A DNA stretch of 64,000 bases, from the NCBI RefSeq assembly GCF_030028105.1, contig NC_092379.1, positions 25,723,821-25,787,820 on the forward strand. Reading direction: 5' to 3'. The translations under genes were made by a program, and so were the position numbers. Below the pieces are notes generated by a model. The model was not told the DNA's origin, did no database searches, and saw only the letters and a list, made by a program, of their open reading frames with translations. Of this stretch, positions 27,281 through 29,145 are shown in pieces (position 1 is the first letter of the stretch; the number at the start of each line of letters is the position of its first letter). The DNA is from Mobula birostris. Lineage: Eukaryota.

Positions 27281-27302
27281 AAATTCTCGCTCTTATAACA
27301 GG

Positions 27303-27321
27303 TGGTCACTAGATGTCGCGC
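27303..27321 (+). promoter_or_regulatory. Candidate CTCF-binding element 22 bp downstream of the RSS of V segment 1
   Basis: TGGTCACTAGATGTCGCGC versus the CTCF consensus TGGCCAC(C/T)AG(G/A)(G/T)GGC(G/A)C; identical in the paralog. Overlaps a CAGGTG E-box at 27299-27304. Confidence 0.6.
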
Positions 27322-29145
27322 TCCCCGTTTTGTCGTTTGCGAATAGATGACGCTTTTGATTGTAGGGTAGCGAAAGATATCGCAATTAAGGTTTGCTGCA
27401 ATACTCCCGATCGTCGCCGCGAAGTGAATTGATCATACTTCACCTACTAAGCACCAAGCATCTTTCGAACTGCAAGCGTATACCTTTCCATGTAGCTCAA
27501 ACAAAACACTGAAAGAAATTAGCAGCCTCGGCAGCATCTATGGAGAGAAATAACGAAGCGACGCTTTTGACCAAAATCTTCCTTGGATGTCTGATATGGA
27601 TTTTCAGCATGATCATTTGTGTTTAGTCTTGCGCTTGCAGGAGTTTCCCTCTATATACATCCTACAGTACACCATGTTTTTTCTATCATTATATACTTTT
27701 TTGCAATGTTGCATCGAAGACAAGAAATGTCACGACATGAGACTGATATTAAACATGATTCTCATTCCTTACTCGTAACATTCATTTTAATTAGAAAAGC
27801 GCTCTTCACCATTTTATAATGTCTAAGAGTGGTACGTATCCTTACACATGTCAATCTTAATGCTGTGCCAGTAGAAAATATTATACAAACGAAGATCAGC
27901 TCATGGAAATTCACGTCTTCGAGATGACGGAATCAGCTCCTCTGAAATTTCTCTCTGCACAAAAACAAAAACAAATGTTTTGGTTAATTGCGCTGTGATT
28001 GTTGGAAATGCGTGGTTGCAGTGACTTGAGTTGATTGCCAACCAACAGCCTCACTTAACAGTGGTGGAATTTACAATCTTGCTCTGCCACCGCATTCATT
28101 TTCTGCAATGGATTGTTTTCTCTGACAACCGACAAGACATACATGATTATGGGATATTTACATATTAGAAGATTCCGGCAATTTATGTACCTGTGTCTGA
28201 AAATGAGGTTTTCAACGGAAAGGAGTCGAAAGTATATTAACAAAAAGATAGGGACAAGTCTAGAACATCTAAATTTGTCAATAGCAGAATAATGTAATTG
28301 CATACCGTCCGGCTCCGTTAAGTATTAGGCAGCTGCTGTGATCGAATTGCTCCAGTTCATTGTTTCAGAGACTCCTTCGATGTGACTCATTGAGACATTA
28401 TATCATACTTTACCTAACCTGTCTTAAAAGTAAAGGTTGTCAGAGTACAAAACAATACAATTATTAAAATTAATTGTTTAAAGAGTTGGCCGAGTAAGCA
28501 CTCATAAAGTCGGCACAACAAACATTTTTTTTTTTTTTTTTTTTGCACACAGTTAGGAGGTGCGTCCTGCATCTCCAGCTTCAGATTTTAGCTATGCTGA
28601 ATTGCGATGAGTATGATTGAAGTATCTGTCCTTTTACGGTTTCTCGCGAGACGTTCTGCAGGTGACATTCGATGAATGCATGAGCACTTTGCGACAGTAC
28701 TTCCATGATCCACAATACATCCAATCAACGTAGCGCGTGTTTGCATCCATATCAAGCTGTACCGAAGTCGATCACTCACTATTATTCAAAGAGAATTTGG
28801 CTCATGCAATATTTACTATAGCTCTAGATGTGGCTGCCCCATACGCACATGGTGAATTCGAAATAACGATAAGGGATTTCTATTTGTGCTTGCACGTTTT
28901 GAGTTGTCTTAAAAGGGGAAGGTCTTCTGTAAATGAGCATGATATAGATTCTCAGGATGTAAACAATTGAAAGGATGAACTTGTATAGTTCTGATTCATT
29001 GCTGACACGCTCATTGTTGCAATTATCCGATTAAAAAAAAAATCAACAGATAAGCGGTGGAAGTCAGTCAAACGTAAATGTCGAAATTGCAGTCTACACA
29101 ATATGTATGCATGTACTTCTTTATTGGTTGGTTTATTTATGTACT

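What the first reader, a model, noticed from the sequence alone, without database searches (positions are those of the whole stretch)
27281..27462. RSS-proximal CTCF-like site in a CpG-rich, hyper-conserved patch behind both V segments
Seen: both V paralogs carry an identical TGGTCACTAGATGTCGCGC starting exactly 22 bp after the RSS nonamer (27303; 41049), in forward orientation, overlapping a CAGGTG E-box. About 165 bp of flank differs at only about 5 positions (about 3%), versus 26/307 (8.5%) in the V exon, and about 13 CpGs in about 125 bp are all retained in an otherwise CpG-poor window. Known: mouse D-proximal Igh VH segments have CTCF elements about 20 bp 3' of the RSS that promote their use during cohesin-driven RAG scanning, whereas mammalian Tcra/d V-associated CTCF sites are mostly promoter-side. 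Inference: a cartilaginous-fish TCR V array may use a VH-style RSS-CTCF module, which would make loop-extrusion-guided V choice very old or convergently evolved.
Basis: partly seen in the sequence, partly recalled or inferred. Interest (0 to 1): 0.82.

Follow-up and report, generated by a model that had tools for sequence, protein, structure and literature searches.

The report
CTCF-type motif behind TCR V RSSs
Two duplicated T-cell-receptor V gene segments each carry a moderate-strength CTCF-type motif 22 bases past their recombination signal; the same motif, position and direction recur behind distantly related V segments in the little skate, so it resembles the loop-anchor sites known behind mammalian antibody VH genes, while the surrounding CpG-rich "conserved patch" is private to this gene pair and of doubtful meaning.

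Summary
The identical 19-mer lies 22 bp after the 23-RSS nonamer of both V segments, forward, overlapping CAGGTG. The patch differs at 5/166 positions against 26/308 in the V exon, and 14 of 16 CpGs are kept. The two copies are one 13.7-kb tandem duplication, so they count as one observation.

On its own the motif is unremarkable: about 12.9 bits and two mismatches to CCASYAGRKGGCRS, with 10 such matches in the window against 5.7 expected. Its position is what counts. Three further, deeply diverged V lineages (little skate, and one unidentified sample) carry stronger forward CTCF-type motifs (15-17 bits) at +21 to +28 bp, and that motif is the only alignable block in their flanks.

No such motif lies behind 4 bamboo-shark, 12 spadefoot-toad, 5 whitefish or 22 teleost-like V segments. 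The last two groups have co-oriented motifs on the promoter side instead.

The E-box and the other ~130 bp of the CpG-rich patch are not shared with other lineages. The duplication also contains longer perfectly conserved runs elsewhere, so gene conversion or uneven mutation rate is not excluded.

The VH-style RSS-CTCF module is supported at sequence level. "Very old" is not shown, and binding is untested. The scan has noted the same layout elsewhere in this genome (TCR-beta arrays and other V arrays on this chromosome).

The parts
24114..37848 (+). Copy 1 of a 13.7-kb tandem duplication that carries V1 and its flank
   Evidence: Self-BLAST blocks at 89-90% identity, offset 13,746 bp. 13,185 aligned columns, 10.3% differing.
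37855..51360 (+). Copy 2 of the tandem duplication, carrying V2 and its flank
26759..26846 (+). Leader exon of V1 (ATG to GT donor), open in both copies
   Evidence: Read. The donor GTGAGT follows at 26847.
26935..27241 (+). V exon of V1, TCR alpha/delta-type (ends ...YLCAMR)
   Evidence: Intact reading frame. Homologues are annotated as T-cell receptor alpha/delta variable. dN/dS 0.86 and dS 0.10 against V2.
27242..27280 (+). 23-RSS of V1: heptamer CACATTA, 23-bp spacer, nonamer ACAAGTACC. A weak match to consensus (5/7 and 7/9).
27299..27304 (+). E-box CAGGTG overlapping the motif. Not conserved in other V lineages.
27303..27321 (+). CTCF-type motif, forward on the V coding strand. The 14-bp core TCACTAGATGTCGC is at 27306-27319.
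   Evidence: 12.9 bits, p about 1e-5. 12/14 match to CCASYAGRKGGCRS. Positional homologue of the 15-17 bit motifs in L001 and L002.
27281..27471 (.). Low-divergence, CpG-rich patch (CpG o/e about 1.5-1.7), ended at its 3' side by a 20-bp indel. Private to this V pair.
   Evidence: No Rfam or tRNA match, no RNA-structure signal and no ORF.
40681..40987 (+). V exon of V2, the paralogue of V1
40988..41026 (+). 23-RSS of V2: CACACTA, 23-bp spacer, ACAGGTACC
41049..41067 (+). CTCF-type motif behind V2, identical to the one behind V1
41027..41217 (.). Copy 2 of the low-divergence CpG-rich patch

Best explanation
The 19-mer is the local copy of an RSS-anchored CTCF-binding element. That element is kept by selection behind several diverged TCR alpha/delta-type V families in at least one batoid lineage and in this genome.

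Shown by sequence:
- The motif matches the vertebrate CTCF core.
- It lies about two helical turns 3' of the 23-RSS nonamer. There are 23 bp to the 14-bp core, against 17-19 bp in mouse VH.
- It is always on the V coding strand, so it points away from the V exon toward whatever lies downstream.
- It is the only flank block that survives between V lineages.

Inferred:
- CTCF bound there would stall cohesin that is reeling V-region chromatin toward a J/C-side recombination centre.
- That would hold the adjacent RSS at the loop base and raise the segment's chance of RAG capture, as shown for mouse proximal VH segments.
- In this V pair the element is a weakened version: GTC in place of GGC in the core, next to a poor RSS. 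It probably acts as a weak anchor.
- The rest of the 190-bp CpG-rich patch is not part of the conserved module. Its CpG retention could be a footprint of a hypomethylated, factor-bound region. It could equally be a by-product of patchy gene conversion between the two copies.
For: - Motif, position and orientation.
- Independent lineages. L001 carries a forward motif at +22 (16.9 bits) and a second at +50 (13.8 bits). L002 (Leucoraja erinacea) carries forward motifs at +28, +21 and +28 (16.7, 15.2, 16.7 bits).
- In L002 all three matches with at most 1 mismatch to the published IUPAC consensus are the RSS-proximal ones, against 0.12 expected.
- V exons of these lineages are at most ~70-75% nt identical. 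Their flanks give no BLAST hit except a 30-bp block containing the motif, and the multiple alignment shows only the core conserved.
- The chance of a forward hit of 12.9 bits or more in a 21-bp window is about 2.4e-4 per lineage. It was seen in 4 of 4 motif-bearing lineages.
- The pipeline does not find the motif everywhere: 0 of 44 RSS-bearing V segments in bamboo shark, a shark-like contig, Pelobates, Coregonus and two teleost-like arrays.
- The same pipeline recovers a promoter-side, co-oriented arrangement in the teleost-type arrays: 13 of 33 V segments, 280-450 bp upstream for most, none in the opposite orientation. That mirrors mouse Tcra (PMC5859386).
- Known precedent and function: PMC6746451 and PMC7930373.
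- Loop-extrusion signatures are reported in the little skate (bioRxiv 10.64898/2026.10.19.759930).
- In the patch, 14 of 16 CpGs are kept against 57.5% in the unit overall.
Against: - The window's site has mismatches at two informative core positions.
- The two copies are one observation, and 19 identical bases at 10% divergence is expected 13% of the time.
- The neighbouring RSSs are weak, so the whole recombination apparatus of this V pair may be under relaxed constraint.
- The module is absent behind related V segments in the bamboo shark.
- There are no occupancy, methylation, looping or V-usage data.
- The direction to J/C cannot be read from this window.
Confidence: 0.55

Rival explanations
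1. Decayed relic plus gene conversion. The motif descends from a once-functional RSS-proximal CTCF site but no longer binds usefully. The low divergence and CpG retention of the patch come from a gene-conversion tract or local mutation-rate heterogeneity between the two tandem copies, not from function.
For: - Two core mismatches, and only a chance-level count of equally good sites in the window.
- Weak heptamers and nonamers next to the motif.
- V exons evolve near neutrality (dN/dS 0.86).
- The unit holds 12 perfect runs of 58 bp or more against 1.9 expected, with longer ones (147, 120 and 99 bp) in stretches with no recognised function.
- The patch beyond the motif has no counterpart in other lineages.
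- CpG enrichment is not seen behind the L001 or L002 V segments.
Against: - Both V exons and both leader exons are intact after about 10% divergence.
- The patch starts right after the RSS, with the motif in its first 59-bp identical run (27299-27357). It ends sharply at an indel.
- Both CpG and non-CpG sites are under-diverged.
- T at the second G of GGC occurs in roughly 8% of sites in the recalled matrix, so binding is not excluded.
Confidence: 0.25
2. Family-specific downstream V enhancer. The whole ~190-bp patch would be a regulatory element of this V family, like the V8E elements behind mouse VH8 genes. It would bind E-proteins at CAGGTG and other factors, with the CTCF-type motif as only one component.
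For: - The patch is about ten times longer than a CTCF site and lies immediately after the RSS. It is in the lowest 1% of divergence and has CpG o/e 1.5-1.7.
- The E-box is present in both copies.
- Precedent: a ~200-bp conserved, open-chromatin element directly downstream of the RSS of VH8 genes (PMC10390877).
Against: - It is conserved only between two recent paralogues.
- Nothing beyond the CTCF core is shared with other V lineages, and the E-box is not shared either.
- Comparable or longer conserved runs occur elsewhere in the unit.
- No further motif evidence could be obtained with these tools.
Confidence: 0.12
3. Chance resemblance. A CpG-rich flank happens to contain a sequence that looks like a CTCF site.
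For: About 0.5-1.5 hits of this score are expected per 64-kb window. There are 10 two-mismatch consensus matches against 5.7 expected.
Against: Stronger motifs occupy the same position (+21 to +28) and strand behind three other diverged V lineages, and none was found behind 44 control V segments.
Confidence: 0.05

Closest known systems
RSS-associated CTCF-binding elements of mouse and human Igh proximal VH segments (Ciccone et al. 2019, PMC6746451; functional work summarised in PMC7930373)
   Same: - A CTCF core motif on the V coding strand, a short fixed distance 3' of the 23-RSS nonamer.
- The motif is conserved while the RSS-to-motif spacer sequence is not.
- Orientation is uniform.
- A second site about 28 bp further on occurs in one relative (L001: +22 and +50), compared with 19 or 48 bp in human.
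   Different: - The locus type is TCR alpha/delta-like, not Igh, and the host is an elasmobranch.
- The distance to the 14-bp core is 22-29 bp, not 17-19 bp.
- The sub-consensus differs (TCA[C/G][T/C]AGA[G/T]GGCGC, with T rather than C at the first core base in 3 of 4 lineages).
- The window's copy has GTC for GGC.
- Binding and effect on V usage are untested.
V-associated CTCF sites of mouse Tcra/Tcrd (Loguercio et al. 2018, PMC5859386; Shih 2012 and Chen 2015 as cited there)
   Same: The same locus type. The sites are associated with V segments and mostly point toward J-C (129 of 144 in mouse).
   Different: - The mouse sites lie upstream of V promoters or are intergenic, not behind the RSS.
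- The promoter-side layout is also what I found in Coregonus and two teleost-like arrays.
- No promoter-side site of 11 bits or more is present in the window or in L002.
V8E elements downstream of mouse VH8 genes (PMC10390877)
   Same: A ~200-bp stretch immediately 3' of the RSS that is more conserved among family members than the neighbouring sequence.
   Different: V8E is defined by open chromatin and shown to act with PAIR4 as an enhancer. Here there are only two paralogues, no chromatin data, and comparable conservation elsewhere in the duplicated unit.

Membership tests
RSS-associated CTCF-binding element (VH-type CBE) | Sequence match to the vertebrate CTCF core motif | tested here: met
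   12.9 bits, p about 1.1e-5, relative score 0.88 with MA0139.1 as recalled from memory. 12/14 match to the published CCASYAGRKGGCRS. The match is moderate: the mismatches fall at two informative positions, and the count of equal matches in the window is within chance.
RSS-associated CTCF-binding element (VH-type CBE) | Short, near-fixed distance 3' of the V RSS nonamer | tested here: met
   22 bp to the 19-mer (23 bp to the 14-bp core) in both copies. Relatives: +22 (L001) and +21, +28, +28 (L002). Mouse VH is 17-19 bp (PMC6746451).
RSS-associated CTCF-binding element (VH-type CBE) | Uniform orientation relative to V transcription | tested here: met
   All RSS-proximal best hits are forward on the V coding strand, in 6 of 6 V copies across 4 lineages. 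The weaker reverse hits in L002 are the palindromic overlap of the same site.
RSS-associated CTCF-binding element (VH-type CBE) | Motif conserved across V families while the intervening and following flank is not | tested here: met
   The multiple alignment shows only the core conserved. Pairwise BLAST of the flanks finds nothing except a 30-bp block containing the motif.
RSS-associated CTCF-binding element (VH-type CBE) | CTCF (and cohesin) occupancy in vitro or in lymphocyte precursors | not testable with these tools
   Needs EMSA, or ChIP or CUT&Tag in elasmobranch thymus.
RSS-associated CTCF-binding element (VH-type CBE) | Promotes use of the adjacent V during cohesin-driven scanning; convergent partner sites on the J/C side | not testable with these tools
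   The window holds no J or C segment. Needs Hi-C or 4C and repertoire data.
V8E-like downstream V enhancer | A ~200-bp flank conserved among family members beyond the neighbouring sequence | tested here: inconclusive
   The patch is in the lowest 1% of windows. Only two paralogues exist, and longer perfect runs occur elsewhere in the unit.
V8E-like downstream V enhancer | Open chromatin or active marks in recombining precursors | not testable with these tools
   No chromatin data.
CpG island (Gardiner-Garden and Frommer criteria; established knowledge) | At least 200 bp, G+C at least 50%, CpG o/e at least 0.6 | tested here: not met
   o/e is 1.5-1.7, but G+C is only 0.45-0.49 and the CpG-dense stretch is only about 110-140 bp within the ~190-bp patch.
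Structured RNA, tRNA-derived repeat or coding exon | Rfam or tRNA match, folding energy beyond shuffles, or an open reading frame with constrained substitutions | tested here: not met
   No Rfam match and no tRNA. Folding z-scores are +0.84 and -0.18. There is no ORF of 60 aa or more, and most differences are non-synonymous in the longest open frame.

The most novel reading that the evidence does not exclude
RSS-anchored, J-ward-pointing CTCF sites are an ancient gnathostome way of presenting V segments to a RAG recombination centre by loop extrusion. On this reading they are retained in elasmobranch TCR loci and in mammalian Igh, while the promoter-side placement in teleost and mammalian Tcra is derived. 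The patchy distribution seen here (skate and this genome yes; bamboo shark, toad and teleosts no) would then reflect repeated relocation or loss of the anchor rather than independent gains.
Probability: 0.15. Interest if true: 0.8.

Novelty: new variant of a known kind. Interest (0 to 1): 0.55.

Why it matters
How a recombinase picks among hundreds of V segments is explained in mice by cohesin loop extrusion stalled at CTCF sites. The clearest case is the CTCF site just behind the RSS of proximal VH genes.

Finding the same geometry under apparent selection behind TCR alpha/delta-type V segments of cartilaginous fishes has two consequences. The RSS-plus-anchor design would not be a mammalian Igh peculiarity. 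The age of loop-extrusion-guided V choice would also become directly testable, by CTCF and cohesin mapping and Hi-C in skate thymus. I found no paper reporting this.

The contrast found here points to an evolutionarily mobile anchor position: RSS-side in the skate and this genome, promoter-side in teleost-type arrays, and neither in the sampled bamboo-shark and toad arrays. For this particular V pair the site is a weak instance, and the eye-catching CpG patch adds little.

Tried and rejected
- Small RNA or SINE: no Rfam gathering-score match in the whole window and no ARAGORN hit.
- Structured RNA: folding of the patch on both strands was no better than shuffles.
- Coding exon: six-frame translation and the ORF list showed no credible ORF.
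- Dispersed repeat: self-BLAST finds only the paralogous copy in the window. A genome-wide repeat cannot be excluded with these tools.
- E-box as part of a conserved module: rejected, because it is absent at the homologous place in L001 and L002.
- CpG-rich patch as a general companion of the motif: rejected, because the flanks behind the L001 and L002 V segments are not CpG-enriched.
- Promoter-side CTCF sites for the window's V segments: none of 11 bits or more within 800 bp upstream. A 9.2-bit reverse hit at 26477 is not kept in copy 2.
- The first word-index protein search with the bare V exon found nothing. The length filter may have excluded the 181-aa closest relative, P0006.
- The Callorhinchus relatives have no contig on record.
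- The search with the skate two-V model found no further batoid models.
- The species behind SRR17051962/3 could not be traced.
- The atlas look-up of the LINE reverse transcriptase gave no taxon finer than Chordata.
- L008 proved to be an allele of L001 and added nothing independent.

Full report
**1. What is there**

The window holds two TCR alpha/delta-type V segments on the + strand. Their V exons are at 26935-27241 and 40681-40987 and end in ...CAMR. Homologues are annotated as "T-cell receptor alpha/delta variable". Each is followed by a 23-spacer RSS: CACATTA/ACAAGTACC for V1 and CACACTA/ACAGGTACC for V2. No other V-type exon is in the window.

The two V segments are the two halves of one 13.7-kb tandem duplication. 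It spans 24114-37848 and 37855-51360, with 10.3% differing columns and 8.0% substitutions. Everything seen "in both V segments" is therefore one evolutionary observation.

**2. The observation**

- The 19-mer is present only at 27303 and 41049, forward.
- It lies 22 bp after each nonamer and overlaps CAGGTG.
- The V exon differs at 26/308 positions, the patch at 5/166 (6/182 for the range as given), and the RSS at 5/39.
- Fourteen CpGs are shared and two are not. Retention across the whole unit is 57.5%.

The patch is under-diverged at CpG sites (2/32 against 22%, P=0.017). It is also under-diverged at non-CpG sites (4/150 against 7.15%, P=0.015). It ranks in the lowest 1% of 182-column windows.

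Two qualifications apply.
- The window is only moderately CpG-depleted (o/e 0.69).
- The duplication as a whole shows patchy low divergence. There are 12 perfect runs of 58 bp or more against about 1.9 expected. Runs of 147, 120 and 99 bp lie in stretches with no recognised function, and the patch's runs of 69 and 59 bp rank 7th and 12th.

**3. Is the motif a CTCF site?**

That is the top or second-highest score in the window, but 0.5-1.5 such hits are expected by chance.

The published consensus CCASYAGRKGGCRS (quoted in PMC6746451) gives an independent check. The core TCACTAGATGTCGC has two mismatches. The window holds 10 such matches against 5.7 +/- 2.6 in shuffles. On its own, then, the motif is not beyond chance.

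**4. Relatives decide the question**

An exhaustive HMMER search with the V exon and contig look-ups gave V loci from other sources. A fixed pipeline was applied to each: tblastn for V exons, best RSS, then a PWM scan of the next 150 bp on both strands.

Motif-bearing loci:
- L001 (a Logan assembly of SRR17051963, species unknown, V 59% identical in protein). It has a forward motif of 16.9 bits at +22 and a second of 13.8 bits at +50.
- L002 (Leucoraja erinacea). It has forward motifs of 16.7, 15.2 and 16.7 bits at +28, +21 and +28.
- In L002 the three consensus matches with at most 1 mismatch (0.12 expected) are exactly these three sites.

These V lineages are old. Their V exons are at most ~70-75% nt identical over partial alignments. 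Their 3' flanks give no BLAST hit, except a 30-bp block between L001 and L002 Vb that contains the motif. In the multiple alignment the only conserved flank block is the core: TCACTAGATGTCGC, TCAGCAGATGGCGC, CCTCTAGAGGGCGC and TCACTAGAGGGCGC.

A forward hit of 12.9 bits or more inside a 21-bp window has a chance of about 2.4e-4 per lineage. It occurs in four of four lineages. This is the pattern Ciccone et al. described for mouse VH: a conserved motif and a conserved distance, with an unconserved spacer (PMC6746451).

**5. Negative controls and taxon spread**

The same pipeline finds nothing of 6 bits or more (4 bits or more where that was tested) within 150-200 bp of the RSS in these loci:
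- four Chiloscyllium punctatum V segments (L004, L007);
- one contig whose flank resembles the Chiloscyllium one (L005);
- 12 Pelobates cultripes V segments (L003);
- 5 Coregonus V segments (L006).

In two dense arrays of unknown species (L009, L010), 22 RSS-bearing V segments have no hit of 8.3 bits or more within 60 bp of the nonamer. One has an 11.1-bit forward hit at +86.

L006, L009 and L010 instead carry co-oriented CTCF-type hits upstream of the V exon, most of them at 280-450 bp. This holds for 13 of 33 V segments, with none in the opposite orientation. That is the promoter-side arrangement reported for mouse Tcra/Tcrd (PMC5859386, Table 2 and its TCR alpha/delta section).

So the anchor's position differs between lineages. 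The RSS-side version is present in the little skate and in this genome but not in the sampled bamboo-shark relatives. I could not identify the window's species (one search gave only Chordata), so I do not call the module batoid-specific. My data establish neither "very old" nor "convergent".

**6. What the rest of the patch is**

- The E-box is not conserved at the homologous place in L001 or L002.
- The ~130 bp after the motif has no counterpart in any other lineage.
- The flanks behind the L001 and L002 V segments are not CpG-enriched: o/e 0.52-0.75 against 1.7 here.
- No RNA family, tRNA, RNA structure or ORF explains the patch.

Three readings remain. First, a hypomethylated footprint around a bound site. 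Second, a family-specific regulatory element of the V8E kind (PMC10390877). Third, a gene-conversion or low-mutation tract like the others in the unit. With only two paralogues and no outgroup, these cannot be separated.

**7. State of this V pair**

Both leader and V exons are open. dN/dS is 0.86 and dS is 0.10, equal to the background. The RSSs are poor, at 5/7 for the heptamers and 7/9 and 6/9 for the nonamers. The motif has T where all relatives have the second G of GGC. This looks like a weak instance of the module, or one under relaxed constraint.

**8. Mechanism**

The proposed mechanism is inferred from mouse Igh work summarised in PMC7930373 and PMC6746451. CTCF bound just 3' of the RSS, pointing away from the V exon, would stall cohesin extruding V-region chromatin toward a J/C-side recombination centre. 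That would keep the RSS at the loop base and favour RAG capture. Loop-extrusion signatures are reported for the little skate (bioRxiv 10.64898/2026.10.19.759930).

Shown here are motif identity, offset, strand, and conservation across lineages. Not shown are binding, methylation state, looping, the direction to J/C, and any effect on V usage.

**9. Novelty and earlier notes**

My literature searches found no report of RSS-adjacent CTCF sites outside mammals.

The scan's own notes list 23 entries on RSS-CTCF pairs in this genome. They include two followed-up TCR-beta arrays with motifs about 40 bp past the RSS. They also include unchecked notes on V arrays 2-3 Mb away on this same chromosome, with offsets of 23-24 bp. 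I could not read that DNA, so these are leads only. They agree with my reading.

This is a known kind of element (the VH-type RSS-associated CBE) in a new locus type and clade. This particular instance is a weak one.

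Noticed in passing
L006, L009 and L010 (whole loci): In Coregonus and two dense V arrays of unknown species, co-oriented CTCF-type hits (11 bits or more) lie upstream of the V exon in 13 of 33 V segments, most of them at 280-450 bp. None is in the opposite orientation and none is behind the RSS. This is a promoter-side layout like mouse Tcra.
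   Followed up: partly
L001:719-765 (also L008): This V has two forward CTCF-type motifs, at +22 and +50 bp after the nonamer. The 28-bp spacing recalls the 19 or 48 bp positions reported for human VH.
   Followed up: no
L005:1007-1100 and L007 from 10538: The two shark-type V flanks share a 49-bp block at 75% identity right after the RSS. It is not CTCF-like. This may be a different conserved RSS-flank element in that lineage.
   Followed up: no
window 31277-31560 and 24512-24900: These are the most conserved stretches of the 13.7-kb duplication, with perfect runs of 147 bp from 31373 and 120 bp from 24536. No function is recognised. 31297-31427 is bracketed by splice-acceptor-like (ttgcag) and donor-like (GTAAGT) signals but has no open frame.
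   Followed up: partly
window 1239-8348: LINE-type ORFs. Endonuclease domains are at 1239-2345 (-) and 4398-5828 (+), and a reverse transcriptase is at 5859-7067 (+). Further repeats: 9976-10838 matches 17766-16905's forward copy (16905-17766) at 85%, and 15665-16109 matches 19535-19081 inverted.
   Followed up: partly
window 27242-27280 and 40988-41026: Both RSSs deviate from consensus (heptamers CACATTA and CACACTA; nonamers with a broken A-tract). The relatives have near-canonical RSSs. These V segments may recombine poorly.
   Followed up: no
window 63047-63065 (+): A 13.1-bit forward CTCF-type hit (TCAGCACTAGAGGACGGTA) with no V exon nearby in the window.
   Followed up: no
window 27043-27056 (-): A two-mismatch match to the CTCF consensus lies on the reverse strand inside the V exon, over the codons of the conserved Trp-Tyr. 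It is probably a coincidence of the coding sequence.
   Followed up: no
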